From: Octopus bimaculoides
Lineage: Eukaryota
Direction: 5' to 3'
DNA: 64,000 bases
NCBI RefSeq assembly: GCF_001194135.2
Contig: NC_069002.1
Location: 37,323,073-37,387,072 of the forward strand
The notes under the pieces were generated by a model. The model saw only the letters and a program-made list of their open reading frames with translations. It ran no database searches and was not told where the DNA came from. Below, in pieces: positions 3,001-59,625 of this stretch (its first letter is position 1; each line of letters starts with the position of its first letter). The translations under genes were made by a program, and so were the position numbers.

Positions 3001-3127
3001 CCTTTGGCTATACAAACGATCTTCCCTTTAGCTATACGAACGATCTTTCCTTTAGCTATACAAACGATCTTTCGTTTACCTATTCAAACGATCTTTCCTT
3101 TGGTTATACAAACGATCTTCCCTTTAT
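1..3127. repeat. 24-bp minisatellite array (about 130 units, consensus near GCTATACAAACGATCTTTCCTTTR)
   Basis: Unit directly visible; translates to AIQTIFPL / YTNDLSFS repeats, which explains the long ORFs at 52-3153; contains two N gaps. Confidence 0.98.
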
Positions 3128-5220: not shown

Positions 5221-5450
5221 TAATAATAATAATAATGGTTTCAAATTTTGGCACAAGGTCAGCAATTTCGGGGAAGTGAGTAGGTCAATTACATTCAAAC
5301 CCCAGTGTTCAACTGGTACTTATCTTATTGACCCTAAAAGGATGAAAGGCAAAGATGACCTTGATGGAATTTGAACTCAGAACATAAAGATGGACAAAAT
5401 CTTGCTAAGCATTTTGTCTGGCATGCTAACGAGTCTGTTAACTCGAGAGG
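5221..5450 (-). mobile_element. SINE family A copy (others on minus near 4500-4685, 4880-5050, 6240-6370, 9830-9980, 26400-26560, 46180-46385)
   Basis: Shared core aaggatgaaaggcaaag..gacc..ggaatttgaactcagaac and (TAA)n tail. Confidence 0.85.
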
Positions 5451-16029: not shown

Positions 16030-17738
16030 TTAACCACATATACATTGATATTTCGTCATTTTTGTGGTCTGTTAACATCATGTACCCACCAGGGTTGAAA
16101 GCAAGTCACCTAGCCAGCCCATGACTTACATGCTCATGGCGTGTTAAAACAAGTACTGGCATGCTCAGAAATTGCATACCTAAGAGAAAATTTACATATG
16201 AAATAAAAGCAGCCCTAGTATAATAAATATTAGTCATCGGCCACGTCAGCGATTTTGATTTATAGAAATAATTAACACTAATCAACCAAGAAAGAAAAAA
16301 TAACCAGGAGGAGAGAGGATTTGCTTACCTGGAACTGAGAGCATATTTTTCCGTGTGTCTCACCAAACCCTTCAACTTCGTATCACTGTTGCTGAGACAA
16401 TTCTTCACTAACTCAATACGACAATTGATCACTGATGCAGAGTCATTGGAGACTTTCTGATCAGAAACGTCTTCTCCTTCTTCTGTCTCCTGCAGACAAG
16501 ATTCACTCGCCTCCTGCACAACATAGTCCACAACTGTACAGATTTGCTCAAGTCTCAACCCAAGAACATCATCTGAAGTGAAACTCTGAATAAAAAGAAA
16601 ACAAAAAGAAAAATAACATTTTTCAATTTATGGAACAATAATTAATTAAAAGAAAACAATTTTTGAAAGTTATATCAAATTATCAGAAAAGAAAGAAATA
16701 ATGTCAAATGTACACTTTGAAACTGTAATGTGAAAAATGATTAGTCTTGTAAATGTTACTTTATTTTTATATAAAGTATCCGTCATGTACTGGAGTGAAA
16801 TAAATTTACTAACACTTTAAACAATTATTATTATTATTATTAAGGAAGCCAACTGGCAGAATCCTTTGCATGCCGGATGAAATATTTAGCAGCATTTCTT
16901 TTGGTTTTATGTTCTGAGTTTAAATACCACAGAAGATGACTTTGTCTTTCATCTTTCTGGGGTCAATAAAATAGGTCCCAGTTGAGAACTGGGACTCATG
17001 TAATTGACTACCCCAACAATTGCTGGCTTTGTGCCAAAATTTGAAACTATTATTATTACTTCTGCCTCAGTGAAGGTGGAGGTATTGCTTACAGCTGTGG
17101 TTTGAGGGGGTGAGGAGCCGACTGGTAGTGAAAAGACAAGAAAGGTAATATGTGCCAATATTTCCCTCAAGTGACTAGTCACTAAAAAGTGCCATTTACG
17201 GAGGAGTGATGGAGGGCTGGGTATTAGAGGAATGGGATATGGAGAATGCTTGATGGGGCAGAATGAATTGCAAGTATAACCAGAATGCTTTCAGGGCATC
17301 ATTTATGCTGTGGTGGGCAGGTCTTCTCAAGCCACAGCAAATAGCCAATCATCTCAGTCATTTGTCATCTTCTCTGCGAGGCTCAGTATCCAGAGATCAG
17401 GTCCCACTACTTCTCTGACGTCTTCCTGGCCCTCCCTATTCCACAAGTTCCTTCCACTGTCCTCATCCACATGCATCACATACTTCCGTAGACAAGAGTG
17501 AAGTTAACTCAGTTGATTCAGTTGAAGATTCCAGTCAACACAAAATAGAATAAAGGGGTGTAAAAGTACCAACCTTTTGACCTTTTCTTTCTTGTCCTTG
17601 CCACAACTTTGGAATGTGAATACAGGCCCAAAGGAAGTCTAGCACAGAGGTCGGGTCATGCCTGCAACAGAAAACAATACAGAAAACATACACATACACT
17701 AAATATGTGTGTGTGTGTGTGTGTGTGTATACATATGC

Positions 17739-19764: not shown

Positions 19765-22700
19765 GAAGGAGGATAAGCAATCATCCAATCACCAGTTTGC
19801 TTGAGACTCTATTTTAAATTTTTCATCTCATTATCAAAATACTCACCTGATACAGTTTTATCTTCTTCAAGTTCTTTGTTAGAATTGAAGATCTTTGAAG
19901 CTACGGTTTGTATTTCTGATGCTCCTGCATGTTGGTTGGAAGAATGGTGACAGTAAGATACCATGTACTGATTAACTACAGCTGCTACTGGAGATCTGTG
20001 ACCTTTACATAAAGACCAGAGTTGTTCCATCATTTGTCTTAAAGAGTCCTGTAGTTGTCGCTGCAAAGTAAGAAACAAAGAGAGGATGAAACCAATAAAC
20101 TGTCCACAGTTTGTCTACCCGATGTGAAAGGCCTCTCCGAAAAGATACAAAAGATATGCAGTCCATATGACATCAGGACAGTATTCAAGAGTAATACAAC
20201 ACTTCACAAATATCTCCTTCAAGTAAAACCACCAATAGAAGAGAATATGACCAAAGACTGCATGTACTCCATCCCATGCAGCTGTGGTAGGTTATACAAG
20301 GGTGAAACATGCCACCTCCTTAAAATAAGGGTAGAGGAACATTGCAAAGCTGTGTCACGGGGGAGATATTGATAAATCAGGTATAGCTGATCATGTATGG
20401 AAAAAGGGAGACCACCTCCCCTTGTGGGATGAAGTTAAAATAACAGACAGAGAACACCACTGGAAAATACGAAAACTAAAAGAAGCAGCACATATGCTAG
20501 GACACAACAACCTCCTAAGCAGACCGAGTGCAGATATGAACAACATATGGGAACCGGTATTAAGGAAGGATAGGAGAATATTAGATTTATAAGCCCTAAA
20601 ATTCACTCCATAATTGCCCACAGCATTCAGTGGTTATGCATAAGGCGTAATGGTTAAGAGCATGGGCTAATAACCCCAAGATTCCAGACAGTGACCTAAA
20701 TGATGAATGATGATGATGTTGGTGATGATGATGACGACGACAACATCAAAAAATACCTTAGGAATGAGAACCCAGGTTCGAAATTTCCCCAAGACACCTG
20801 ATGAAGGCTGGAGGGCATATCAGCCGAAACATATTAACAACAAACAAGATGAGGACAAATATACATAATGTACATTGTACATAATTCCTCATCTCTTAAA
20901 TATAGAACTGTGTTCTTCCTTATTTCAGTCAATTAGGGTCTAATTTGGTTGCCTCTTCTAGCAACTTGAATGACCACACAGGTTCCCTAAATGGCTCTTT
21001 ATCCAAAATTAAATGTCAACTACGGTAAGTTGAAGTAAAAATCTTGAATGAGAGGCACAACAAATTCAAGACTTAGGTTGCCATGCCAACCTTTGACCTT
21101 AAAATTCATATACCAATAATTTTTCACTTCAAACAATTATCCAGAATGCTTCTTGAATTTACAGTAAATTAAACAAACCCAACAAATAAATGATAAAAAT
21201 TAATGCAATCACCTGATCCCTTACCTGTTTTGCAATGAGCAGCTTCAGTAAAGGGCAAGCTTTGGTTGCTGATTTCAACATCTGTTCAACAAATACTTCT
21301 TGTTGAGGAGAGTTCAATATCTGAAAACAAAAAAGAAAAAGGAAGGAATTTGCAACTAAATATTTCACTGGTTTTATTCTTTCAATACAAACCTGCCAAA
21401 GACCATCTATAAGTTCCTACTTATCAAAGCACCCACAACTGCCAATATAAAAATCTTGTGATTAAAATAAAGCTGTGATGTAAGATCTCAGTCAATAAAC
21501 ATATATCAAATTGTGTTTCAAACACGAATGCGAGCAATAATTCTTATTTTTTTAAAATTATCTATTTTGCTGCTAAACCTAAGCAAATTTTTTATCATTT
21601 TAAGCTGTGAATTTGGGTTTGAGATGAATGGTCATGATAGTGTCAAAATGAACACATGCACACACACACAGAAATATACCATGGTACCTTGAGTGAGTGT
21701 CTTCTACGAGAGCCTTGTGAGTGGATTTGGTAGAAAACTGAAAGCTCATATACATATTTGTGCCTTGTGAAATGAAGATTTTTTGTGGCATAAACTGCGA
21801 TCCCACCGACCTGCCAGGTATGATAAACAATAGCATTGGATGGCAACAGAGAATCATGAGAATCCATGCAAACCACATGACTGAATTATGATGAAGATGA
21901 TAACAAAAATTTGAAGCCATTGTTGGTATTCTCCACTGAAGACTGTATATTGCTGATGAGCAGATACCATGATGAGTGTTATCCAGGATACAGTGGAAAA
22001 GTGAACCACTGAATTTGGTTAAAAAGAGACGATGAGCAATAGCTAGAAGAATATTGAGTGAAACCAAGAAACCAGTTGATCTCACAAGTATCAAGTTTGG
22101 TGAGGTTGAGTAAAATAATTTAGCATTGTGTTCGTTGAATATTTTATGGTATCTGTGTGTACGTAAAAAGAACTTATTCCTCACTTCCTTCAAAAAGAAT
22201 GTAAACAACTTAAGTACAATTTATGTAATAACATGTTCCATGAACAGATGAACAATGTAATTCCTAATGACATTGTATCATATAGGAAGTTAAGAGTTAA
22301 TGACCAGTTGAATGTTTCAATTTTGTCAAATTTGCTCTGACATGAACGATAAACACAAACCATTCTGTAGGTTATCATCAATCATTATAAAAATATATAT
22401 TTTCTTTATCTACACACACATACACACAAACATATATATACACATCTATGCACGTACGACACACACACACACACACACACACATGTAGCAATGTAATGCA
22501 ACAGAATGCTGCTTACAGTATACAATTCCCATATAATTCTATGAGCATAGACCAAACTCTGTAGGCATTTGTTTCTGAATTACTACAGAAAATGCTGTTT
22601 GAAATCTTTATTTGGCTAGAAAGTACCAGTAATTAGAAGAACTCACTACTTACCAAGCTAAGGGCCTTTGTGATATTTAATGCCACTTCATTGCTAGATG

Positions 22701-25700
22701 TCAAACTCTGAGGAGAAATGGAGAATGTGAAGAATGTGACAAAATGTTACAAATTGAGAAACTGTCACTTACAGAAATACCACAAAGATGAAGTAAATAT
22801 TTACAAAATATAAAAAGATTTAAACAAAAACACGAATATACCAAGGAAATGATGACAAAAGGTGAGTCTTAGATCTTTAATGTAAATTCATGTAAAAAGG
22901 TTCCACAAACTTCCTCCACCCCAAATAAATAATGATGATATTTCTTCCAAATTTTGGCACAAATCTAATAATTTTAGGAGGGGACAATTAAATACATGCC
23001 CAATAAACACACACAAATTTATATATGTGTGTACATGAATGGTCTTATGTGCCCATGAGGTTAGATATGTGTATCTGTGTGTATGCACATATAGAACTAT
23101 GAATGTACTGAGATATGTAAGTTCATACTTTTACAATAATTTGCTTTTGTACTTTTATTTCAATTTTATGAATTTACAACTTATTCTTCTATATTTTCAA
23201 CATTTTAAAGGATCTTGTGACACATTTTTGTTTGTTCCCATCATATTATTGTATTTTATTCACTATTATTCAATCATTTCTATTTATTTTAAATTATTTT
23301 AGTTTACAAAATATCCCTGATTTTTTTCCTCTTATTTTATCTTATTTTAATTTATAATTTTGTGTGACCACCTAATTTAGTGAGGCGTCAGCTTACTGCA
23401 TTTAGCCAAAGAGAGGGTAAGAGGTTGTTGAACAAATGAACAAACGGAACTATAAATTATGGACAGTAACTTAACGAATTAAAGAAACCACACCTCTTTT
23501 TGAGAATGCAGCAAAGACATGTGATTGACTGTTTGAAAAACTTTTTAACTACTTCTCCTCAGTTTGTAACTCAATTGTACATTCTTTGTCCTATAACATT
23601 TGATACACAATGCTAAATCAATTTCGATAAGAAGCAGTTGTGTACCTGATGTGGAGACAGATTATCCCCATATTTGCTGGATTTTCTACTTCACAAACAC
23701 ATGTACAGAACCGTGACTATCCATATATTCCATATATTTATTTATTGCATACTGTTCAACGGAAGTTGCTATTGAATTCAGAGTTGTGTGGCATTTGTCA
23801 TCTTGTCAAAATTGATTCTATTCATTTTGGAAAAGGATGAAGGGAATCATACATTTTTATTAATAAATGTTATTCTGAGCTGAAAATTCTGCTGAGAATG
23901 AGACATTGCCTGTCATCCTTTCAGGGTCAATAAAATAATTACCAGTCAGATACTGGGGTTGATGTAACCAACTTCCCTTCCCCTCAAAAACTACTAGCCC
24001 TGTGCCAAAATCTGAAACTGGTATCATTAAGTTCTCACCAGTTCTTGGAAATTTATAAAAACAAAGATTACCTTTAATATTTTTTGGTACTGTCCAGCAG
24101 CCAAAGAGTTACTGTTCACAGGACTTGAAAGGAATAGCTAAAAATAGAATGAAATGAAAGGTCATTTGTAAGAAGTGGGGTAAGTTACAGAAGAAGGTTA
24201 TGTGGTAAGTGACACGGTGAAGTTGGGACAGAAGAAATGGCAAAAAAAAAAATGGAAATAAAGCGAAAACCAAAAAAAGGATGTTGAGAAGTAGAAAGGG
24301 AAAGAATGGCAATTGAGGTGTTGATGAGGCAAAAGTACAGCGAAATGTAAGGATATTAATCAATGAAGAATGGGTAAGAGGGAAATGAAAAGTTGAAAGA
24401 TAGAAAGGATCCGAATTTAAAATGGTCATACACATTTCAGGGATAGAACGATCAATAGATAGATCCCTCAGCAATCTATCTTCTAGTCCTGAGTTCATCA
24501 GCTCTATATTATGTTCATTAAAAAGATACTTAACTCACAAATGACACTGTCAACCGAGATGTAAAGGGGTACCACAAACAAAGCACAACCTACCTCTCTA
24601 AACAGTAGCAACAGTGCTGTACAATTGGATAAGTGGTTCATTAGATTGCAGTGCTGCTAAGGTAAACTTCCATTGTGGATCTGGAGAAGCTACACCAGTA
24701 TTCAGGTGTGGCACTTTGTGTTTTACAATTGTTTCGGTGCCAATCTGCCTTGCTTTTGGAACTAGATTGTGATTACCAGAGATTAAATGTGCAATGGTTG
24801 TAAAACAAACTTGTAGCAATACGTAATAAGAGTTGATGAAAAGAATATTATCCCAAGTCAGTTTATCATAATATATTTATTGCTATTTTAGAGAGAAAAA
24901 TACAAAATGTGTCAGTCCAATAGAACAAAAAGAGAAAGACCAGCACGGTGCATTCCAGTAGGTTCATCTGGGTCTCACAATGCATGTGGGTGCACAGACC
25001 ACCAAAATGTTAAACTTATATTATCAGTCATTCCCTTGACTATAACGAAATCATGTAATTGGTAGTATGTGATGTCTTCAATGAAAAGTGTGTTTCATAA
25101 ATGTGACAATTGTCCAGATTTATCAGTTCTAAAAGATTCGAGGCAGTGGGGATTAAAGAAACACACCTTCCAAGTGTGTTTCAATGGCCATAAAATCTAA
25201 CTGGTAACAGCAATAGAGCTGAAATTTTCAGAAACTACCCCTCTCGTGGATACTAACAAATTGTGTAAATTTAAAGAAAATCTAAGAACCTTTGTGATAG
25301 TTGAAATTCCCTGGAATGACCCTAATGGAATCAGTTAGAGAAAGCATTTTGTTTGCAGTCATGCTTCATCACTTATGACTCTATCAATTTCTATTGCCTT
25401 TACTTGTCAATATCATCAGCTGACTGACCACTAACACAATCCAGTCTGTCTGAGTGCTTGTCCAACTCTTTTCCACTACTTATTTGCTATTCTTTTTATA
25501 AGCTGTAATCAACGTACTCAAAGCATGACTGATTTTCAATCAACAATTTTGGATTTGTTTGAATTTTTACTGACATCAGTCAAAGAATATGAGATGTAGT
25601 TGTTGAGCATCGTTGCTTAGGTTTCTCTTGACACCAACACATTTGTAAGCTGCTTTGATCTGATTCCAAATATTACTACAAGACCCTTGGTCAGTTTGTT

Positions 25701-30975: not shown

Positions 30976-33900
30976 TGGGGGGAGGGGAAAGAAGAGCAAT
31001 TACTTACAAATGCCAGGTCATCTAAATTCTGTAAACTGACATCTTTAACATGACGGTCTAAGAAGATGACATACGCACTGACCAGAGTTGGATCAGTTTC
31101 AACACGACAGGCCTGGAAATACAGAATTAGCATAGGTCAACAAGTTCAAAACAAGGATTGATGGTAGAGTGGTCAAGTGATGGTAAGTTAAAAATGCAGG
31201 GACATATTGATTGTAAAAATGTGACAGGTAGCTTCAATATTGATACTTCACAGATAAAACTGAATTGACAGAGTTGGTAGAGCATCAGATGGAATGTTTT
31301 GTGCTATTTATTCCAGCTCTCTGAGGTTTGAGTTCAAATCATAGTGAGGTAAATTTTGCTTTGACTCTTGTGGTGTTGATAAAGTGTAGGTGCCACTTAA
31401 AAGCACCCAGTCTACACTGTAAAATGGTTGGCGCTTGGAAGGGCATCCAGCTGTAAAAACCTTGCCAAAACTGACCTCGCTTGTGCTTGTGCCATGTAAA
31501 AAGCACTAAGTCCATTCTACTGAGTGGTCGGTGTTAGGAAGGGCATCCAGCTGCAGTTGTCTTACCAGAAATATAGTATCAAGGGTGCTTTTCCCTGATA
31601 CAAACCCAAACTGCATCTTGCCTAAACTAACTCTCTCCCTGATTAGTTGGGCTATGGCCCTCTCCATGACTTTCATCACCTGATCCAAAAATTTGATACC
31701 TCTACAATTATTCCTATCTAATGTGTCACCTTTACCTTTGTAGCAGTTGACTATGGTACAGCTACACTTGTCATTGGGTATGATTCCTTCATGTATCACC
31801 TGGTTGACTATACGGGTGACTAGACTATAGCCTACACCGCCAGATATTTTAAGCATCTCTACAGTGATTCCTGAGGGGCTGGGAGCTTCCCATGTATATA
31901 TATATATATATATATATACATACACACATATATATATTTGTGTGTCTGTCTGTCTGTCTCCCCGCTATTGCTTGACAACCGATTCTGGTGTGTTTATGTC
32001 CCCGTAACTTAATGGTCTGGCAAAACAGACTGATAGAATAAGTATTAGGCTTACAAAGAATAAGTCTTGGGGGCGGTTTCATCAACTAAAACCCTTTAAG
32101 GCAGTGCTCCAGCAAAGCCGTAGTCAAATGACTGAAACAAGAAAAGAATATGGTAACCTACCTGTACATGGCCAAAATCAACTTCGTGGCCTCGTGCTGG
32201 ACTGAGAAACGATGGACAATGGTAAATGAGACCTACAAACTGATTGAACAAGATTGGACCAGTCCAATGCAGTGGACCAAGCAAGTGGAAAGAAAAGTAT
32301 GTGGGGCTCAACAAAATGAGATGCACCCTAAAAGGAAACTTACCTTTCGAATTGCATAGCAGGCCTGGGTTCGGAGAGAATCAAACAAAGGCAAACTAGG
32401 GAGATAGAGAAGTAACCACTTATGTTGTGGAATCAACTTCAGAAACTGTTCCTCTTGTTCATCCACTTTGATGGGTTCAATCTCAGATGGAGGAATGTGA
32501 GACATCGACACAACAAGTGACAGACCCTGTTAATGAATCAGATAATGAGTCAAATAAATAAGCAAACAAACAAACAAAAAAAATTCCAAGTAACAAACTA
32601 GAGAAATAAAAATTTTCAGTTTTTTTATATTTAATCATGATCAATCATCCTCATTTAGTTTCTGCTTTCCTTGCAGGCATGGGTTGGATTGTTTAACTGA
32701 AACTGGTAAGCCAAAGAAGCTGCACCAGGTTCCAATTTGATCTGACATGGTTTCTATGGCAGGTACTCTTCCTAACACCAGCCACTCCAAGAGTGTAATG
32801 GGTGCTTTTTATATACCACTAGCATGGGTGCCAGTTACATGATACCGGCATCAGCCACACCTATGATTTCACTTTGCTTGACAAGTCTTCTCAAGCATGG
32901 TATATTGCTAACGGTCTCGGTCACTTAGCATTGGCTCCGTGAGGCCCAATGTCCAAAGGGTGCTTTTCACATGACACTGGTATGGATGCCTGTCATGTGA
33001 CACCAGCATCAGTCAAGATCATGCTTTCACTCGGCTTGACGGATCTTCTCAAGCACAGTATGCCACCAAAGGTCTTGGTCACTTGTCATTGCCTCCATGA
33101 GGCCCAACGTTTGAAGATCATGCTAGAATGAAGGTGGTCTTTCCAGGATATTATCAGTCAATGGTCTGAAGCTCATAGCTTTCATTACAACCGTAGGATA
33201 GCTAAGTTTGCTTGTTGATGGACATATATATTTGTGTGTATGTATGGCTGAGAGGCTTGCTTCCTAAGCATCTGGTATTGGGTTCAATTCCAAGGCATGG
33301 AACCATGGACAAGTGTTTTCTATTTGACAACAGCTATATGAGTGGATTAGATAACCAGAAAATGAAAGCTTATCAGGCTATAGGATGCAATGTTGTTTGT
33401 TTCCAATCTTTTGTGAAAAAACAATGTAAGGCCATCAAGGCTGTAGAAATACCTGCTTCAACAAATTCCATCTGGCCCATGGAAGCATAGAAAATTGGAT
33501 GTTAAAATGGTGAATTTGAATGAAGGTTTTCTGTTTAAACTTACCTGACTTAACAATATCATTATTGCTTTGAGAAGCAACACCTACCTTGATAGCCAGA
33601 CTTCGACTTGAAGCTTGACTGGAAGATAGTCTCTTGAAAAAATAGTCCATAACTTCAAAAGTGGTGGTGCTATCACTTGATGGACTGTGCACCAGCATTT
33701 GGAGTTTGGCCAGTAGCTGTTCTTGTTTCTTCATTTTCTGAAAAACAGAAAGTATACGGACATTAGCAAAGCATCCTGGCATTGCCCGGGTGTTATGACC
33801 TACAACCACATTGTATTATTTGTTCCTTTCTTATAGGCAGAATCAGCACAGCTACTATATAGTGAACTGGATTACTGGTGGAATGAATATTTTATATTTG

Positions 33901-36482
33901 TTTAAAAGTGAAGGGGGAGGGGTACAATTTGAATGGGTTTTCATGAAAGTGCTTTCAGTTCTTAAGAAGGATCACAAAATTATGTAGCTTGCACCCCTTT
34001 TCCAGGTAGAGATGATAATGGTGAACCAGCGGGTTATGAATGAAGTAGCTCATTCTCTGCAGATTAATCATGGTTCTGCCTATCAAATTATCCATGATGA
34101 GACTGTGCAAGATGGGTGCTAAGACGGCTTCCTGCAAAGCACAAGCACAAACATCTTGAAGTCTGCCAATGTTTACTCGATTGCTACAAGAATGAGGGCG
34201 AGGAAACTTTGAGCAGAATAGTCAGAGGGGATGAAATGTGGGTCCATCATTATGAGGCAGAATCCAAAAGACAGAGTATGGAGTGGAAACATCCTGGCTC
34301 GCCAGTGACAAAGAAATTCAAGATTCAGTCTTCCATGGGAAAGGTGTTGCTAACCCTTTTTTGGGACTCAAAAGGGCCTATACTGGAAGACTACCTGGAA
34401 AAGGGGTCTACGATCAACAGTGCAAGATACAGTGCTTTGCTGGCCAACAAACTGAAGCCAACAATTTGCACCAAATGCCGAAGCCTATTGTTGGAGAAAG
34501 TTCTATGTTGTATGACGATGCATGCCCACACATGCCCAGACCATTGAAACCATTAACTAATTGGGTTGTGAGGTGCTGGAACACCGTGCCTACAGCCTAG
34601 ATCTTGCTCGCTTCTGACTATCATATCTTTGGACTACTCAAAGATGATTTACGAGGTTGTTGGTTTCCTATGGATGAAGATGCAAAGGAAGCGATGCATA
34701 AATGATTGCACAATCAACCAAAAACCTTCTTCTTGGAGGGAATACACAAGCTTGTGGACCGCTGGACCAAGCGCATCGAAGGAGACTATATAGAAAAATG
34801 ATGTACTTGTTTATCCTCTGCTTTTGTGGAAATACATTGAAAAAACAAGAGTACGCATAATTTTTGACTCTCTCTCATGTATATATATGTATGTGCATAT
34901 ATATATATATATATATANNNNNNNNNNNNNNNNNNNNNNNNNNNNNNNNNNNNNNNNNNNNNNNNNNNNNNNNNNNNNNNNNNNNNNNNNNNNNNNNNNN
35001 NNNNNNNNNNNNNNNNNNNNNNNNNNNNNNNNNNNNNNNNNNNNNNNNNNNNNNNNNNNNNNNNNNNNNNNNNNNNNNNNNNNNNNNNNNNNNNNNNNNN
35101 NNNNNNNNNNNNNNNNNNNNNNNNNNNNNNTGGCCAAAAGTTTGGAACATAGACCTGTAAGTTAGAATTTTTATATTAAATGCCCAAATATATACATTGT
35201 ATATGTTTGAATTGAATTGTACTTGGGTATAACAATTTTAATTTTTTTTAAATGTTCCAAACTTTTGGCCACAACTGTATATATGATAAACTTCCTACAG
35301 TTTCCATCTACCAAATCCACTTGGCCAAGGTGCCACTAAACCATGAATCTGTGAAGCAAACTCCTTAATCATACAACCATACTTGCACCTATATAAACAG
35401 AATAAAAGTATATTCTTATAAACACTAAATACTGACCCGCTTTTTCTGTTTCTCAGCTTCGAAATCTGCATCGTCATCTTCTGTAGAGTCTTGTGGATCG
35501 TGAAGCAGAAACTCACACAAACATTGCACTGGGAGAACATCCAGTGATCCTTCATTGGATTCTACCAACTCAGCCAGCCATGGCATAGATTGTGTAGTAC
35601 CCTGCATCAGAATTTGTTAAGCAGTTATTAAAGAACATTAAAAAATATAGTATGTCTACTTCAGCATGGTTTCTACAGTTGGATGCCCTTCCTAATGCCA
35701 ACTACTTTACCAAATGCTGTTTAGGATGCTGCTTTTGTGACAATGACACATGGGGTTGCCCAGTAACTAATCGTCCTCCAAACAAAGAAAAAGACCCCTT
35801 GACTGAGTGAGGTTGTAGTAGAGAGGGAAGTGGCTCAACACCAGGTGTTGAGAGGCTAACGTGTAATAGAGGGGACAGGTACAGGAGGGATACGTGTGTG
35901 GTTTAGAAGTAGCTGGAAAGTAGACAATGGTGGTGATAAGATGTTATGCATACTCTCAGGATACAAGAAGGTTAGTACAAGAGAGAATGTGGTCAGAGAA
36001 TCGAAAAGTGGGGGAATAAGAGTTCATTAGAATTAGTGTAGAATGGCAAATGGTTGGAGATGGGGTACAGGTGAACGTAATGAATGAAACAAGGGTGGAG
36101 GTGTGGTCAATAGTCCAATATAAAAAAAAACAAAAACCCAGTTCCCAGTCTATATATAGAATATTTAAAATTATACCGCTGTCAAAACAATTTAAAATTT
36201 AAAAGACACATGGAAACATAATGTAGAAGTCAAAATAAAAACACTGTTCTGATATTATTTACCTGACGTTGAATTATGTCGAGCAGGAAGTCTGGGTTAC
36301 GACTTCGGCACAACCGCTGACCAATTTTCAGATTCTGGTTCAAAGTCACGAGCTGCTCAATGACAGTAGAAGGAGGTTTACGTAAAGATCCTCTGTAAAG
36401 AACAACAGTGGGAATGGGATGATAACGTTACTATAGCTGTCATATACATGTGATGCTGCATATATACTTTCGTAAGTACATA

Positions 36483-45700: not shown

Positions 45701-46591
45701 AGTTGACTGTTGATGGCTATAACCAATCAGTTGGTATGATACCTATGTATCATACTTGATAGATTATGTGAGAGATTAGCTTGAGTCTTAATTGCCACAT
45801 ATCTTCAGCATCTCAATGGAATTGTAACTTTCTCCCATCTTCATGTCCTTCATGGCCACTCTGACCATATAACTGTCCACTTCAACAGCTGGTTCCCTCT
45901 ATAAGTAGTTCTTCTTCTTCTCACAACATTTTCAAGCCTAAGATGACCAAAGTGGAATTTGATTTCAGAAGGCAAAGCATCAGAACAAAAAACACAAACC
46001 ATTTGTTTGATGTTCTAACAACAAGAACAACAATAATAATAGTTTTTTGATTTAGGCACAAGACCAGCAGGTCTTAAAGTGCTGGAACAGGTCGTATAAG
46101 GCCTTTCCACTGATTCTGCCATTCCACCACCCACCAATTCAATAATACCAACCCACTCCCATCCTAATCATAATAATGCTTTCTACTATGGACACAAGGC
46201 TTAAAATTTTTTTTTTTGGGGGGGGGGGGGCTACTCGATTACATTGACCCTAGTGTGTCACTAGTACTTATTTTATCGACCCTGAAAGAATGAAAAGCAG
46301 AGTCAACCTCAGTAGAATTTGAACTCAGACAAAATGCCACTAAGCATTCTGCTAGTCATGCTAACAATTCTGCCATCTAACCACCCTAGTTACAACAACA
46401 AAAGATAAAATTATGCAAGAGTTCTGAATTCAAGGATAAAAAAGCAGTCATTACCAGTGAACATATTCATGTGGTTTCATTTCAACTATACTTGGTACAA
46501 CAGTGTGAAGCCACCACACACTGTCTCGTTGAATAAGTGTTACCTGCTGCTGATATTGGTGAAGAATTTCCAAATCTGAAAATTATAAATG

Positions 46592-46622
<31 letters not shown>

Positions 46623-47461
46623 CAAAGACATCATCATCATCATCATCATCATTCTTATATCCACTTTCTGCCACATTCAGTAATTTGGTGTAGATGAATG
46701 GCTTGTAACTGGATGAGTTTAGCGAAGAATTAAGCATAGATGTAGTTCAAGGCTCAGTCCACAGTTCCCCCCTATTTATTATAGACCTACAGGCCATCAT
46801 AGAAGAATTCAAGACTAGATGCCCTTGGGAACACGTATATGCTGATGACCTAGCTCTCATAGCTGAATCTATAAGAAAATTAGAGAGGAAATTCTGAGCA
46901 TGGAAGCCTTAGCAAAGGTTCTAGTCAGTAAGAAAGAAGATAGGAGTCTGATATCTTCAGGGAAATAGCCTTGCTCACTATGAAGTAATGAAATAGGTAT
47001 AAATTCCATAAACTGTACCCAATGTAAACGATAGACATGCAAGAAATGTAGTGGAATCAAAGGTAGACTAGCAGAGAACTTAAGCTTTGCATATTAAAGA
47101 TGCACTAGAGTAGTATGTATTAAGAACATACCAGAAATAGATGATTTTGAATTCTAGGATGACTCACTAGAAATATGCTGTGTCTAGGGAGAGTCATACT
47201 GTCTTAATAATGCCTTATTATCTAACACACTCACTGATTTGATTTCCACTCATTTATTATTTATATTTTTGCTTTCAAAGCTGTTGTTGCTTTTGCAACC
47301 TTGTCAATCATCCTATTTTTCAGTGTAATAACTTTACTAACCTTTACGATCACCACGGGCCAAATTGCCAAAAGCTTCTCTCACTGAAGGTGTGATTCCG
47401 ACCAAGATGGTCAAAGTGATAAGATCAGTTATTGCCAAAACATACCGCTCCTAAGAAAAAA

Positions 47462-47498
<37 letters not shown>

Positions 47499-49706
47499 GT
47501 ACTTTTGGTGAAGCATTTAAAGAGATTTGTGTAAGGCTGGAACAACGAAAGAATCACAAGCTAAACTACAAAAGGGAAAAGAAAAAACAAATGATACAGT
47601 GATCAGATATATCTGCTGAACATTAGCTCACTCGCTCCCTCCCTCAAATCAGCATTGCCTGAACAGGTGCACAGTGTGCCCCACGTCAGGTATCAAAGTG
47701 ATCACAGAGCAATGGGAAATGAAATATTTTGTTCAGAGACACAACGCACCGCCCAGTCTAGGAATTGAAACCAGGATGTCACAGTTGTCACTGCAACACC
47801 CTAACCATCATATATACAGGGTGTCCCAAAAATAAGGCAACCAAAGTTTCGGGCTTTAATAACTATCAATAAATGTGATAAGATATGAAAAATATACATC
47901 ATTATAAAAGCTTAGTGTGTCTTCTTTTTCTTTAAGACTAAATAAACTCAGATATATAAATTAGATAATGGCTAGAGACTGAAACATAATTATAATCTTC
48001 CACAAAGGAGGTGAAAGTAATACAGTTTTAGCAAAAAGCTTAAGATTAACAGAACAGTCTGGAAAATTGTCAAGAAATTTCAAGAGACTGGTTCCACCAG
48101 TGATTGAACTGGACGTGAGTGAAAAAGAAGTGCGCAGACACCTCAGAGAAAACGTATGGTGATATTCTCATTATTCTGTCAGAAAACTGGCTGCCACAGC
48201 AAAAATAAGCTGACCATCAATGCATTGAGTGCTGAAGGAGGATCTCAAGACCTACTCCTACAAGATGATCTGCCATCATGAGCTCACACAAGTTTATAAG
48301 GCCATGAGACTGGAGAGAAGTCATCTTATCTTGTGTCAGGTAGCTGAAGGCATGGGCCCAATTTGTTTTGGCAAATTGGAAAAAGTTGGTTGCCCTAATT
48401 AATTAGGTAAGGAGAGAGAGAGTTTTAATTAAAACTTTATTACAAGTTTTATTCAGTTGTTACACCCTATTCTCCCCATTCTGAAGTTCCATGCCTCCCA
48501 CAAAATATCCTTCCTCACACTAGTGGAGCATATACCCCTGTTTGAGAAACACTGCAGAGTAGATGGAAACTGTATAGAAGCCCATCATACACAAGTACAT
48601 CTGAGTAAATTGATGCATACAAGGGAGTTAACTATCTAGAGAGACATAACTCTGATAAACTTGGCTATTCGATAATAATAGTGGTTCATAAGATGAGCAG
48701 CAGACCAAGAACAGAGGTTAACATAATTAATACCATTGAAGGTAGTGCCGTACATGACTTCTGTATAGAAATATTGAAACCAGTAAGAGAATAATGGAAT
48801 AAAAGAATACTTACTTTAAATGCTTGATCCATATCAAGAAATTTAGTCTCAGTTCGTTTTTGCATCAGACCCAAACAGAAAGCCACAAAGTTCAAATCAT
48901 GCCTCAATGAACGAACTATTTCCCTAAATAGAGCCCTTAATGCTCTTAGGTAGTCTTCTTTATTAACCAACAGGTCCTGGAAGATTTCAGCAAGGATCTG
49001 TAGGAGAGATATGCAAAAGACATTAGGAACATCAGATGAGGAGGAGAGAAAAAACAAAATAGTGATATTAGTAACAAAGATAATGATTGTGATGATATTG
49101 GTGCTGATGATGGGAATTGTGGTGGTGGTGATGTTGGCTAGGATGATGCTGATGTTGATTACAGTGGTGACAGTAATGATGCTGTTGGCTATGGCAATGG
49201 TAGTGATGGTGATGGTGGTGATCACGAAGAAGATAACAGGCAGTGGTGAGTTGGTGTCCAGCTCAGGTCAGACTTGATCAAGCAAACACATCCCATCTTT
49301 CACGGACTTTTGTTGTTCTTTTGGAAGTATTATGGCTGTCATTTAATGTAAGTATGACAGCTACTTGATTCAGGTTCAGCAAACACAGAAGCTCCTGGTG
49401 GTGATGATGATGATGATGTTAAAATCAGCCGTGACCGAGCAGACGTAGGAGTCTAAGATACTGCAACCTTATCTCACTCCGTCACCTCAGACACAGTGCA
49501 ACCAGCATGGAATATAGACATGACGATGACGACGATTATGACGATACTTACTCTAGCAGATGTTTCTGGAGAACTTTGACATATTACACCAAGTAAAGCC
49601 ATGTTGTTAGGGTTACGAGCACTGGACAACTCATTGTAGATGGTCTGGGTTAATATCATACGTAAATTTTCAGAGTTTTGGGAGAGAAGTTCTCTGTAAT
49701 TATATC

Positions 49707-49737
<31 letters not shown>

Positions 49738-52700
49738 AATATAATTATTTCAAACATTGGCACAGTATTATGGAGTGATTACAGTCAGGCAAATTAACCC
49801 CAGTGTACTTTATCCCTTTTACTGATTTCAACCATCAGGCTATGATTATGTTGGAACTTAAATTTCAAGGGCTTAATTGATCATATCAACCCTGCAATGA
49901 TTATTTCAGTCTGGTACTTATTTTATATTTCATTGATCTACATTCATCAAACAGCCAAGTCACATCGTTTGGTTCAACAATAACTTTATATCAATAAAAA
50001 CAGAGACAAACACACACACAAGAAACCTCTACACAAATATTACCCATTTCAGAATTAGAATCCTAATTATGCAATGTCAATGTATGGTATAATGTACACC
50101 ACAAAATCACCATGAACCAAAAACCCCTAAAAAGGTTTAACTCTAAAGAACTATCAATGACTTGTAGGTATATGGTATTTCGTTATGCAACTACAATATA
50201 CTATAAAGTATATTAAATGTTTTTTATGAGTCAACACCACATCCTGCTGTTTTAGCAGTGCACTTTACATTATTTTGTTAAGGTTATTTCTACAGATATA
50301 AATTATAGCCAGCACTGATTTTTTGCTACAATATTTCATATCAAGATGTAAACATTGAGACTGAAGATAAAAATGAGTAATGAGTGTATATGCCATATTT
50401 CAGGGGTTTTTTGCCCCTTCATCAGCACCCATCTAACCCATTCTTGCCTCTGAACACATTGCTTACATAGCCACCGCATACAGCAGTGTTAAGCTATTGG
50501 ATTTACCAATTTACATATGAAACACATTCCTGGAGATGCTACGTAAATATTAATGATTTGTAGGTACGTGGTATTTTGTTATGCAACCATACAATATAAA
50601 TAATATACTGTATAAATAATGTAAAAAGCACTGCTAATGCAGTAGAACATGGGGTTGACTTATAAACATTTAATATACAAGGTGTCCCAAAAGTCGCTGA
50701 GAGATTTCAATTTTCAATAGCTAAATCATGAGTGCAACACTAACCACTTGGCCACACATTTTATCCACTCAGACATGTCCTGGGTAACATGTACTGAATT
50801 AAGCACAAATTTTTTAAAAAATAAAAATAAATTATTTTCATTTTTGCCACACAAATTCTCACAAATCAGAAACTCAAAAAGTGAGAACTACTACGTAAAT
50901 TGTTTTATATTTTACCAAACTCCTTCAAAATCATAATATTAAAAAGAATTGAAAAACACAGGCAACTGGAGCCTCTACTTGGTGTCTCAACTTGTAAATA
51001 GCAGTCAAGTGTCCCTCAAACCAGACCCAAAGAGCCTGTTGAATGATGTGTTCTTGGGTTTCCTTCACGCGGGAAAAAGACAAGTCATGGATGGAAAACC
51101 TCTGACTGTAGGTCCATAAGTGGGCTCAATCAGAAGTGTTTTAGGGATATGCCACAAGAACTCATAACAAATATAATCAGGGAATGAGTTAATGAAAAGA
51201 AAAAGTCTTACCGCAGACTTGAAAGGTAATGGTTAATTAGAGGTTTAGTTTTCAGTCGAATTTTGGTTAGTTGAACAATAGTCTCCACATCCATGGAAGA
51301 TGATTGGTCACAATTGAGACAGACAGAAAGTAGAAGGTCTTGAGCTGATCTAGACAACTGTAATGGGAGAAAATGTAAAAATATTTTTTAGTCATATTTC
51401 ACAAAGGATAACAGATTAAATTACAAACTGTTTAAGTTTAGCAAAACCTTTGGGATTCCATCAAGAGTTAAGTCAAAACTCTTCATGGAATCCCATCTCT
51501 TGTCTGCTGGGGCTTAGTTTTGTCTTTTTCACAGTAGTGACAAACCAGATGTGACACCTCTCATAACAGAAAGCTGTTGCTGTATTTTTTTACCAAACCA
51601 GCCACTCTGAAGAGTGCAGTCTTAAGATAATCACCTGATTATTAAATATACTGTGTAACTGATTGGTAAGATCAGTTGAAATGGATCTAGAATATTATAT
51701 ATATCTTAATATAGCCTCTTCCATATGTAGCCATCAGCACTTCTTTATACATCTGTCCTCATCCATCCACATGACAATACCAGTACAATCTCACCTGCAC
51801 ACCCCATAAGATGCTTCTTATACCCAATTTTTATCAACATATTTGTGCTTTGTCATATATGCATGCTGACATTTTAATCTAGCAAAGCATGAAAATTCAC
51901 ACAACCAACCTTTGGATTTTGTAGCCACATTTCTAGACGCTGTGCTGCAGTAAGACGGATCTCCCCAGAACCACAAGTGACTGTCATAAGCCGGATTAGG
52001 TTGCGTGTTGAACCATCCATTGGCTGACGTTTGTTCAGTTGTTCTCTCACAATTTCAAGGACATCTGATTCTATCATCTCTTGCTGGTAAACGTATCTAA
52101 GGTAAAAAGCAAAGAAGTTGGAAAATGAAAATAAAAAAAATATATCCCAGGGGAACTAATCACAGTCTGCATCAACGAAAAATTTAGTAAAGTTTTGCAA
52201 ATTTGAACATGGTTGTATGTCATGGGCAGACAAGAGTTTTAAGCAAAGCCTTTCACCAAAGACAGAAAAGAAAAGATTTCTCTCCAAACAAAAGATTAGC
52301 TGGAATTTTCAATACTCACATTCTGTCTCAGCATATAAACTTAACCAAATTTGAAAACTTTGTAAATATCTATGAGAATATCTTCATCTGTACTACTCAT
52401 AATTATGTGACAGATAATTTGCCATTTAATGAAAAGAATACACAAAATGGAGAAATATAACTGCATTCTAAAAATATCTGAGATGTCTTGCATTCACACT
52501 TCACTAACAACCTTAAATAGAGATGAAACCTTCACATTAGAGTCTAAACTGGAAATAAAATGCACACAAATGAATACCTAGAACAAGGTCAAAGATCAAG
52601 ATGAAAATCACACACACATCAATACCTTAATAAGGTTAAATACTACGACACCAAGGTCAAAGTTACAGACATACCTTCAAAGCTCAAAGTTTAATGTCTT

Positions 52701-59416: not shown

Positions 59417-59625
59417 GAAGGTAGCGAGCTGGCAGAATCGTTAAGTATGCCGGGCGAAATGCTATGCGGTAGTTCGTCTGCCGCTACGTTTTGAGTTTTA
59501 ATTCCACCGAGGTCGACTTTGCCCTTCGTTCTTTCGGGGTCGATAAATTAAGTACTAGGGTCGATGTAATCGACTATCCCCCTCCCCCAAAATTCCAGGC
59601 CTTGTGCCTATAGTAGAAAGGATAT
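59417..59625 (+). mobile_element. tRNA-derived SINE family A, least decayed copy (Deu/Nin-domain-like core)
   Basis: Box A-like gctggcagaatcgtta, box B-like ttttgagtttaattcc, core gtcgactttgcccttcgttctttcggggtcgataaattaagtac, tail ggccttgtgcctatagtagaaagg; CpGs largely retained. Confidence 0.85.

What the first reader, a model, noticed from the sequence alone, without database searches (positions are those of the whole stretch)
50379..50433. Apparently intact hammerhead ribozyme in INTS1 intron 8, on the transcribed strand
Seen: the minus strand folds as a complete type I hammerhead. Helix I is GAUGGGUG/CACUCAUU (8 bp, two G-U). The core is CUGAUGA. Helix II is AGGGG/CCCCU with a CAAAAAA loop, followed by GAAA. 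Helix III is AUAUG/CAUAU around a single G. The cleavage triplet is AUA, with the predicted cut between 50387 and 50386. Established: minimal type I hammerheads with near-loopless palindromic helix III occur in Penelope-like elements and metazoan non-LTR retrozymes and often cleave as dimers. Inference: it lies in INTS1 pre-mRNA, and its core and helices are intact although the flanking repeats have diverged about 15-20% from each other. This could mean retention and co-transcriptional self-cleavage in the transcript of the scaffold subunit of Integrator, itself a nascent-RNA cleavage and termination complex. The regulatory link is speculative.
Basis: partly seen in the sequence, partly recalled or inferred. 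Interest (0 to 1): 0.78.

Follow-up and report, generated by a model that had tools for sequence, protein, structure and literature searches.

The report
Lone hammerhead ribozyme motif in intron
A complete self-cutting "hammerhead" RNA motif does sit on the transcribed strand of an INTS1 intron in an octopus-like genome, but it is a single copy of the kind that normally needs a partner copy to cut. It is most likely a leftover of a mobile element and not a regulator of the gene.

Summary
Minus strand 50433-50379 reads as a type I hammerhead with all 11 core nucleotides, A15.1-U16.1, A17, helix I of 8 bp, helix II of 5 bp and a near-palindromic helix III.

It is the only such motif in the window. 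A Markov null gives about 1e-5 per window at this quality, so chance is unlikely.

It lies in a 1518-nt INTS1 intron on the sense strand.

Three features argue against efficient cleavage here:
- It is a single copy.
- Helix III is four A-U/U-A pairs that do not fold alone. Two copies would fold into the classic trans-helix-III dimer.
- The 10.1-11.1 pair is A-U, not the highly conserved G-C.

No Rfam hammerhead model matches it. This is weak evidence, because the same models also miss a bona fide Penelope-element min-hammerhead from Octopus vulgaris.

I found no second copy in the window, in 115 kb of related DNA, or in protein-space searches, so the parent element is unidentified. The orthologous intron could not be reached.

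Intactness is not evidence of selection, because only intact copies get noticed.

Best reading: a solo relic of a dimer-type, retroelement-borne hammerhead. The link to Integrator regulation is unsupported.

The parts
50426..50433 (-). Helix I, 5' strand (GAUGGGUG)
   Evidence: sequence; descriptor gives 8 bp with 50379-50386, two G-U.
50419..50425 (-). Core C3-A9 (CUGAUGA)
50402..50418 (-). Helix II AGGGG/CCCCU with loop CAAAAAA. The closing pair 10.1-11.1 is A-U.
   Evidence: This hairpin is kept in every predicted fold.
50399..50401 (-). Core G12 A13 A14
50388..50398 (-). Helix III AUAUG-G-CAUAU (A15.1=50398, U16.1=50388). Near-palindrome: 4 bp plus a GGC triloop in cis, or 10 bp with a central G-G mismatch in trans.
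   Evidence: the hairpin alone is 0.0 kcal/mol, the trans duplex is -10.4, and the cofold of two copies gives the dimer at -46.8.
50386..50387 (-). Predicted scissile bond between A17 (50387) and C1.1 (50386); triplet AUA
   Evidence: Cleavage itself was not tested.
50379..50386 (-). Helix I, 3' strand (CACUCAUU)
50345..50465 (-). Extended, imperfect helix I. UGGGU (50440-50436) pairs with ACUCA (50378-50374) after a UA bulge, then about 10 more pairs, so the hammerhead sits at the tip of a long open stem.
   Evidence: 121 nt, -31.9 kcal/mol, z=-2.08.
50614..50680 (-). Repeat X (upstream arm of a 68-nt inverted repeat)
   Evidence: (I1), 8, 44: 81% complementary to 50208-50275.
50208..50275 (-). 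Repeat X inverted (downstream arm). Together with X it encloses the hammerhead in a 338-nt loop.
   Evidence: The 491-nt fold gives -150.4 kcal/mol, z=-7.4.
50545..50596 (-). Direct repeat Y (upstream copy)
   Evidence: D7: 77-81% identical to 50149-50200, spacing 396 nt.
50149..50200 (-). Direct repeat Y' (downstream copy, outside the inverted-repeat pair)
49694..51211 (-). INTS1 intron holding the motif (GT at 51211-51210, AG at 49695-49694; 1518 nt, phase 2)
   Evidence: sequence. The flanking exons align to human INTS1 on either side of residue 420.
51212..51357 (-). Upstream INTS1 exon (LSRSAQDLL...HYLSSLR)
49552..49693 (-). Downstream INTS1 exon (ELLSQNSENL...SPETSAR)

Best explanation
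The 55-nt motif is a true hammerhead-lineage sequence: a solo copy of a dimer-type type I hammerhead of the kind carried by metazoan retroelements (non-LTR retrozymes, pseudo-LTRs of Penelope-like elements). It lies passively, in sense orientation, in the middle of a 1.5-kb INTS1 intron.

In its element of origin, two neighbouring copies would pair their palindromic AUAUGGCAUAU segments into one long helix III. Each active site would then cut after A17, leaving 2',3'-cyclic phosphate and 5'-OH ends.

In the INTS1 pre-mRNA there is only one copy, so helix III must form from four A-U/U-A pairs on a triloop. The closing pair of helix II is A-U instead of G-C, and no recognisable loop-loop contact is present. 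Cleavage is therefore expected to be slow or absent, and the effect on INTS1 expression negligible.

Shown: the motif, its rarity by chance, its single-copy state in the window, the energetics and the gene context. Inferred: the retroelement origin, the low activity and the neutrality.
For: - The motif is complete and unique in the window.
- Chance expectation is about 1e-5 per window.
- The monomer hammerhead fold is -16.3 against an MFE of -18.3 kcal/mol and makes up 0.25% of the ensemble. Helix III alone is 0.0 kcal/mol. Two copies cofold exactly into the trans-helix-III dimer at -46.8 against 2 x -18.3.
- Published descriptions say metazoan type I hammerheads have short palindromic helix III and work as dimers. 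Most occur as single, probably truncated copies, and PLE hammerheads cleave poorly in vitro (PMC4209133).
- Retrozyme 'monomers' are common, and about 44% of Xenopus copies overlap introns (bioRxiv 10.64898/2026.07.22.740005).
- The motif sits in a repeat-structured block with X/inverted X and Y/Y' at 77-81% identity.
- Hammerhead-bearing retroelements have invaded this very gene: a Penelope endonuclease fragment with a decayed min-hammerhead lies at 20.0-20.9 kb.
- The two G-U pairs in helix I, and possibly the A-U at 10.1-11.1, look like neutral transitions.
Against: - No second copy of the hammerhead-bearing segment 50276-50544 was found in the window.
- None was found in 115 kb of Octopus and related DNA.
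- None was found in protein space through the ORF that spans it, or in the three contig collections. Membership of a repeat family is therefore not shown.
- There are no tandem units, no target-site duplication of usual size, and no RT/EN ORF in the intron.
- X and Y look like low-copy local duplications, not a dispersed family.
- The architecture differs from the Penelope min-hammerhead of this lineage.
- If the flanking repeats date the insertion, only about 2% of copies would be expected to stay unbroken (my estimate). This leaves some room for constraint.
Confidence: 0.7

Rival explanations
1. Domesticated intronic ribozyme. The hammerhead is kept by selection and cuts INTS1 pre-mRNA co-transcriptionally, lowering or gating output of the Integrator scaffold subunit. 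This is the reader's idea and is analogous to the conserved amniote intronic hammerheads.
For: - Sense strand, mid-intron, complete core and helices.
- No detectable sister copies in any data I could reach, which is what a single-copy domesticated motif would show.
- Precedent of conserved intronic hammerheads in RECK, CTCL and DTNB (PMC6155905).
- Helix I is extended into a long stem.
Against: - No comparative evidence at all.
- Single copy of a dimer-type helix III.
- A-U at 10.1-11.1, where G-C is highly conserved.
- No Rfam HH9/HH10 or other hammerhead hit.
- The accessible octopod sample is only 41 kb of Octopus plus 74 kb of another taxon, so absence of copies means little.
- Intactness is subject to ascertainment.
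- From general knowledge (Dye, Gromak and Proudfoot 2006, not checked here), splicing tolerates intronic ribozyme cuts because exons stay tethered to Pol II. Even cleavage would therefore not necessarily regulate output.
Confidence: 0.06
2. Chance or de novo motif. An AT-rich intron hairpin happens to carry the 11 core nucleotides and two small stems, with no descent from any ribozyme.
For: - The motif has no detectable relatives and no Rfam match.
- The Markov null gives about 0.5 motifs of this quality per 2.5-Gb genome, so one or a few per genome are possible. Real genomes are richer in inverted repeats than a Markov chain.
- It has non-preferred choices at 10.1-11.1, 16.2 and 17.
Against: - Per window, the expectation is about 1e-5.
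- Features not required by the descriptor also fit the known class: a minimal-loop palindromic helix III that yields a perfect trans dimer, and a long extension of helix I.
- Hammerhead-bearing retroelements number hundreds to thousands per invertebrate genome (PMC4209133; 235 Rfam-level hits in giant squid, PMC6962438). Prior odds therefore favour descent.
Confidence: 0.12
3. Part of a still-functional mobile element. The X/inverted-X bounded 472-nt block is a live non-autonomous element, and its hammerhead serves the element's own RNA processing (in trans with sister transcripts), not the host gene.
For: - The 68-nt inverted repeats enclose the motif, with a strong predicted long-range stem.
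- The dimer fold is favoured when two copies meet.
Against: - The arms are 19% diverged.
- There is no target-site duplication at the arm ends (by inspection).
- There are no sister copies in 64 kb plus 115 kb.
- There are no tandem units.
Confidence: 0.08

Closest known systems
Type I hammerheads of metazoan non-LTR retrozymes (Cervera and de la Pena 2020, PMC7229834; bioRxiv 10.64898/2026.07.22.740005)
   Same: Type I topology, a palindromic helix III that allows an active dimer, low-GC context, frequent solo 'monomer' copies, many of them in introns.
   Different: No tandem unit carries a second hammerhead. Helix III is longer (4-5 bp against 1-2 bp plus a 2-4 nt loop). Helix I is 8 bp plus an extension rather than 6 bp plus loop 1. 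There are no recognisable loop 1-loop 2 contacts, the 10.1-11.1 pair is A-U, and no family copies were found.
Min-hammerheads in pseudo-LTRs of Penelope-like elements (Cervera and de la Pena 2014, PMC4209133)
   Same: Dimer logic, palindromic 15.x-16.x, occurrence mostly as single truncated copies, weak in vitro activity expected.
   Different: The Penelope min-hammerhead of this lineage has a bulged A after A9, G10.1-C11.1, helix II of 6-7 bp, ACGU with no loop 3, and helix I of 4-5 bp. It lies about 200 nt 3' of the GIY-YIG ORF. The INTS1-intron motif shares none of these particulars and has no PLE ORF nearby.
[quoted passage not shown]
   Same: Type I hammerhead on the sense strand of an intron of a protein-coding gene, thought to descend from retroelement hammerheads.
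   Different: Those are defined by deep orthologous conservation and by stable, tertiary-stabilised folds that are active as monomers. Here, conservation is untested, no Rfam HH9/HH10 match exists, and the monomer fold is marginal.

Membership tests
Hammerhead ribozyme (general definition) | Core nucleotides C3 U4 G5 A6 N7 G8 A9 and G12 A13 A14 | tested here: met
   CUGAUGA at 50425-50419 and GAA at 50401-50399.
Hammerhead ribozyme (general definition) | A15.1-U16.1 pair and a non-G nucleotide at position 17 | tested here: met
   A50398-U50388, A17=50387.
Hammerhead ribozyme (general definition) | Three helices radiating from the core; open helix I for type I | tested here: met
   h1 8 bp, h2 5 bp, h3 4 bp plus triloop. 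It is the only such site in the window, and the null is about 1e-5 per window.
Hammerhead ribozyme (general definition) | G10.1-C11.1 pair, highly conserved in canonical and PLE hammerheads (PMC4209133) | tested here: not met
   A50418-U50402. In the alternative reading with a bulged A, an extra U lies between C11.1 and G12.
Hammerhead ribozyme (general definition) | Match to a curated covariance model (Rfam RF00163, RF00008, RF02275-7) | tested here: not met
   No hit at gathering score, or at E<=10 on 601 nt or 91 nt. Control: the same models miss an intact PLE min-hammerhead, so this test has low power for retroelement-type hammerheads.
Hammerhead ribozyme (general definition) | Site-specific self-cleavage giving 2',3'-cyclic phosphate and 5'-OH | not testable with these tools
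   Needs in vitro transcription or end mapping.
Hammerhead ribozyme (general definition) | Hammerhead secondary structure is thermodynamically accessible | tested here: inconclusive
   The monomer fold is 2 kcal/mol above the MFE and 0.25% of the ensemble, while the dimer fold is the MFE of two copies. Tertiary energy is not modelled.
Non-LTR retrozyme | Tandem repeat units, each with a type I hammerhead | tested here: not met
   One hammerhead only. No tandem array at the site. Only a 52-nt direct repeat at 396-nt spacing.
Non-LTR retrozyme | Belongs to a multi-copy family (monomers, dimers, multimers) in the genome | tested here: inconclusive
   No copy in the 64-kb window or in 115 kb of related DNA. 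The source genome itself could not be searched.
Penelope-like element min-hammerhead | Lies in the pseudo-LTR / 3' end of a PLE, next to the RT-GIY-YIG ORF | tested here: not met
   No such ORF in the intron. The only PLE fragment is at 20055-20589 on the other strand.
Penelope-like element min-hammerhead | Unpaired nucleotide between 9 and 10.1, long helix II (6-8 bp), short helix I (4-5 bp), no loop 3 | tested here: not met
   Helix II is 5 bp, helix I is 8 bp plus an extension, and helix III is 4-5 bp. Contrast the lineage's PLE hammerheads.
Penelope-like element min-hammerhead | Palindromic 15.2-16.2 region allowing a dimer | tested here: met
   AUAUGGCAUAU pairs with itself (10 bp, one G-G mismatch), and the cofold gives the dimer.
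Conserved (domesticated) intronic hammerhead | Sense-strand intronic position in a protein-coding gene | tested here: met
   INTS1 minus strand, intron 51211-49694.
Conserved (domesticated) intronic hammerhead | Conservation at the orthologous position across species, with covariation | not testable with these tools
   INTS1 exon query returned only two distant Logan fragments. No octopod INTS1 locus could be fetched.

The most novel reading that the evidence does not exclude
The motif is a single-copy, lineage-retained intronic hammerhead of octopods. It cuts INTS1 pre-mRNA (alone, or when the long X/inverted-X stem and extended helix I hold it in shape) and so couples a self-cleaving RNA to the dosage of the Integrator scaffold. 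This would be an invertebrate counterpart of the amniote RECK/CTCL intronic hammerheads.
Probability: 0.05. Interest if true: 0.65.

Novelty: new member of a known kind. Interest (0 to 1): 0.3.

Why it matters
If it is only a relic, it adds one more example to the thousands of retroelement-derived hammerheads in invertebrate genomes. It also shows that Rfam models miss this class. If it proved conserved and active, it would be the first domesticated intronic hammerhead outside amniotes, sitting in a gene whose product itself cleaves nascent RNA. That case needs orthologous intron alignments and cleavage assays before it deserves weight.

Tried and rejected
1. Rfam at gathering score and at E<=10 on 601-nt and 91-nt slices found no hammerhead family. 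I do not read this as refutation, because an intact Octopus PLE min-hammerhead is also missed.

2. The weak Rfam hits (snoR99, mir-279, C/D-box snoRNAs) are far below gathering scores. They reflect the UGAUGA box and the long hairpin. Rejected.

3. tRNA-derived SINE origin: no tRNA found.

4. A second hammerhead one 396-nt period away: none.

5. Finding sister copies through the spurious ORF spanning the motif gave no word-index hit. phmmer against 1.84e9 representatives gave two repeat-protein artefacts.

6. Reaching the orthologous intron through INTS1 exon peptides gave only two distant Logan fragments.

7. Exact-pattern scans gave 6 unrelated hits in metagenome contigs and 0 in genome contigs and viral contigs.

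8. nhmmer of the intron against 115 kb fetched around Penelope endonuclease homologues found nothing.

9. Mariner-type MITE reading of the block: a TIR-like string ACAAGGTGTCCCAAAA abuts X at 50677-50692 and recurs at 47815-47831. I found no partner TIR and no TA duplication. Left open.

10. Reading Y/Y' as a 52-nt target-site duplication of a retro-insertion does not explain why the insert would end in an inverted copy of the upstream flank X. Unexplained.

11. Pfam does not recognise the PLE endonuclease fragment. Its identity rests on the GIY..CxC..YxG signature and on homologues.
Full report
**What is there**

Read on the minus strand, 50433..50379 is GAUGGGUG-CUGAUGA-AGGGG-CAAAAAA-CCCCU-GAA-AUAUG-G-CAUAU-A-CACUCAUU.
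- Helix I is 8 bp, with two G-U pairs.
- The core is C3-A9 and G12-A14.
- Helix II is 5 bp with a 7-nt loop.
- A15.1-U16.1 is present.
- A17 is at 50387 and C1.1 at 50386.

Two points need correcting.
- A 5-bp helix III around a single G cannot close as a hairpin. It is either 4 bp on a GGC triloop or a duplex formed between two copies.
- The pair closing helix II (10.1-11.1) is A-U. Cervera and de la Pena describe G10.1-C11.1 as highly conserved in both canonical and Penelope-element hammerheads (PMC4209133).

**Is it more than chance?**

A descriptor scan of both strands finds this as the only type I hammerhead in the window. That holds even when the helices are relaxed to 3, 3 and 2 bp.

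In 600 Mb of order-2 Markov sequence trained on the window, the counts were as follows.

| Helix lengths required (h1, h2, h3) | Hits in 600 Mb |
|---|---|
| relaxed (3,3,2) | 417 |
| (5,4,3) | 8 |
| (6,4,3) | 2 |
| (6,4,4) or better | 0 |

Each extra base pair costs a factor of about 0.37. The observed quality (8,5,4) is therefore expected at about 1e-10 per nucleotide-strand. That is about 1e-5 per 64-kb window and about 0.5 per 2.5-Gb genome.

Features the descriptor does not ask for also fit the known class.
- Helix III has the smallest possible loop and is self-complementary.
- Helix I continues beyond a UA bulge for about 15 more pairs.

I conclude that the motif descends from a real hammerhead, with chance as a minor rival.

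**Rfam**

No hammerhead family matches at gathering score, or at E<=10 on a 601-nt slice or a 91-nt slice.

As a control I ran the same search on an intact Penelope min-hammerhead from Octopus vulgaris (L007, minus strand, C3 at 11920). It is also missed. The negative result therefore says the motif is unlike the curated families. It does not say it is not a hammerhead.

**Energetics**

- As a monomer, the hammerhead secondary structure scores -16.3 kcal/mol against an MFE of -18.3. It makes up 0.25% of the predicted ensemble.
- The helix III hairpin alone has no predicted stability (0.0 kcal/mol).
- Two copies cofold into exactly the dimeric hammerhead, with a 10-bp trans helix III. That dimer scores -46.8 against 2 x -18.3.

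This is the architecture described for metazoan type I hammerheads, which work as dimers in tandem repeats and are poor cleavers as single motifs (PMC4209133; PMC7229834). The window holds only one copy.

**Context**

The minus strand encodes INTS1. A concatenation of exon-like ORFs matches human INTS1 residues 123-532 with E=8.5e-136.

The motif lies in a 1518-nt GT-AG intron (51211-49694). It is about 780 nt from the 5' splice site and about 685 nt from the 3' splice site. 'Intron 8' is consistent with the exons I can see plus one upstream ATG exon, but I did not verify the count.

Around the motif, in transcript orientation, the order is X (50680-50614), Y (50596-50545), 111 nt, the hammerhead, 103 nt, inverted X (50275-50208), Y' (50200-50149).
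- X and inverted X are 81% complementary.
- Y and Y' are 77-81% identical.
- The X pair is predicted to form a long stem enclosing the hammerhead (491 nt, z=-7.4).

I could not turn this layout into a known insertion signature.
- There is no target-site duplication at the ends of the inverted repeat.
- There is no tandem unit with a second hammerhead.
- There is no tRNA-like head.
- X and Y occur nowhere else in the window.

**Search for relatives**

The hammerhead-bearing segment has no second copy in the window.

The tools hold no cephalopod genome to search by DNA, so I tried indirect routes. All failed.
- The spurious ORF that spans the motif has no relatives.
- INTS1 exon peptides retrieved only two distant fragments.
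- Exact-pattern scans of the three contig collections gave nothing related.

I then fetched 115 kb around homologues of a Penelope endonuclease that the window encodes. The sources were O. vulgaris, O. sinensis and an ENA assembly of another taxon. None of it matches the intron or the hammerhead block.

A SINE-like repeat of the window (46200-46400) has 14 copies in the 41 kb of Octopus DNA. So the window is Octopus-like, and the hammerhead's parent element is at least much rarer than that SINE.

**A useful contrast inside the same gene**

At 20055-20589 on the plus strand, antisense to INTS1, lies a 5'-truncated Penelope-like element. Its ORF has the GIY..CxC..YxG signature that PMC8557442 gives as diagnostic for these endonucleases. 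It has 206 homologues. The best named ones come from O. vulgaris (86%) and O. sinensis (78%), and one is labelled GIY-YIG endonuclease by JGI.

About 200 nt downstream is CUGAUGA-A-GGCUGG...CAGCC-GAAAC (20798-20829). Copies from Octopus and the ENA taxon show the family consensus AACAC-CUGA[U/A]GA-A-GGCUGG..UCAGCC-GAAACGU-U-GUGUU. That is a textbook min-hammerhead.
- It has a bulged A.
- It has G10.1-C11.1.
- It has an ACGU palindrome.
- Helix I is 4-5 bp.

It is intact in L007 and L012, with compensatory changes in helices I and II. The window's copy has lost the ACGU and the 3' strand of helix I.

This shows what a retroelement hammerhead of this lineage looks like. It also shows that the INTS1-intron motif is not one of them.

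**Interpretation**

The best-supported reading is a solo relic of a dimer-type retroelement hammerhead, carried passively in the intron (confidence 0.7).

That argument does not hold, and the following estimate is my own inference.
- If X and inverted X were identical when formed, 19% divergence means about 0.11 substitutions per site per lineage.
- The chance of no change in the 13 fixed positions is about 0.24.
- The chance of no pair-breaking change in the 34 stem positions is about 0.08.
- Together this gives about 2%.
- About one wobble-creating change is expected, and two G-U pairs are seen.

A family of hundreds or thousands of copies would leave some intact survivors, and only those are noticed. 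The age assumption may also be wrong.

The regulatory link to Integrator has no evidence for or against it beyond position and strand.

**Comparison and novelty**

The motif works like the dimeric type I hammerheads of retrozymes and Penelope-like elements. It fails the defining tests for membership of either group: no tandem units, no pseudo-LTR context, and different helix proportions. It could not be tested for the one feature, orthologous conservation, that defines domesticated intronic hammerheads such as HH9 and HH10 (PMC6155905).

I file it as a new member of a known kind, of modest interest.

There is a 5% chance that it is a conserved octopod intronic ribozyme, which would be notable. 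The decisive steps are a genome-wide copy search, alignment of the orthologous intron across octopods, monomer-versus-dimer cleavage assays, and mapping of RNA ends.

Noticed in passing
window 20055-20589 (+) and 20790-20835 (+): 5'-truncated Penelope-like element, antisense to INTS1. It has a GIY-YIG/CCHH endonuclease ORF with one frameshift and 206 homologues, the best named from Octopus vulgaris at 86%. About 200 nt downstream is a decayed min-hammerhead. Core, bulged A and helix II are intact. The ACGU palindrome, the cleavage site and the 3' strand of helix I are lost.
   Followed up: yes
L007 11870-11945 (-), L012 10880-10960 (-); alignment A4: Intact Penelope min-hammerheads in O. vulgaris and in an ENA assembly (ERZ21867824), with compensatory changes in helices I and II. 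Direct and inverted copies lie 0.5-4 kb apart. Rfam hammerhead models do not detect them.
   Followed up: partly
window 46-1724 and 1825-3126: About 3 kb of satellite, with self-similarity at offsets in steps of 24 nt and 83-89% identity. It translates as a repeating 8-residue unit. It lies at the 3' side of the gene.
   Followed up: no
window 50208-50275 and 50614-50680: A 68-nt inverted repeat (81% complementary) within one intron would form a long double-stranded stem in the INTS1 pre-mRNA (fold z=-7.4). This is a possible ADAR substrate in a heavily editing lineage. The inverted copy sits where a direct copy would be expected from the 396-nt spacing of Y/Y', which I could not explain.
   Followed up: partly
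window 49707-49739 (minus strand reads T33): An uninterrupted 33-nt poly-U tract immediately upstream of the 3' splice site of the hammerhead-bearing intron. It is an unusually long polypyrimidine tract.
   Followed up: no
window 34101-34544 (+): Mariner-type transposase fragment (Pfam Transposase_1, E=4.5e-15). Mariner-like terminal strings ACA[A/G]GGTGTCCCAAAA occur at 47815-47831 and 50677-50692, the latter abutting repeat X.
   Followed up: partly
window 15192-15503 (-), 31509-31964 (-), 46709-46894 (+): Non-LTR reverse-transcriptase fragments (RVT_1; one with a PHD-like finger) scattered through INTS1 introns.
   Followed up: partly
window 46200-46400, also about 5221-5437, 14703-14920, 16857-17058, 23906-23967, 59418-59606: SINE-like dispersed repeat family. 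It has 14 copies in 41 kb of O. vulgaris / O. sinensis DNA and none in 74 kb of the ENA taxon. This places the window in or near the genus Octopus.
   Followed up: partly
window 11778-12021: A 244-nt segment that is 95% identical to its own reverse complement (a perfect-type palindrome or foldback).
   Followed up: no
L001 3118-3147, L003 6475-6504, L005 351-380, L006 200-229: Four JGI metagenome contigs share a nearly identical stretch, CUGAUGA-AGGGG-ACCUUCAGU-CCCCU-GAAAC-ACUC...AGUGU. This is a hammerhead-like core with the same A10.1-U11.1 helix II as the octopus motif, in an unknown organism.
   Followed up: no
window, about 59-61 kb and elsewhere: 990 N in several runs (assembly gaps), next to (TA)n/(CA)n-rich sequence upstream of the first visible INTS1 coding exon. 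The 5' end of the gene may be incompletely assembled.
   Followed up: no
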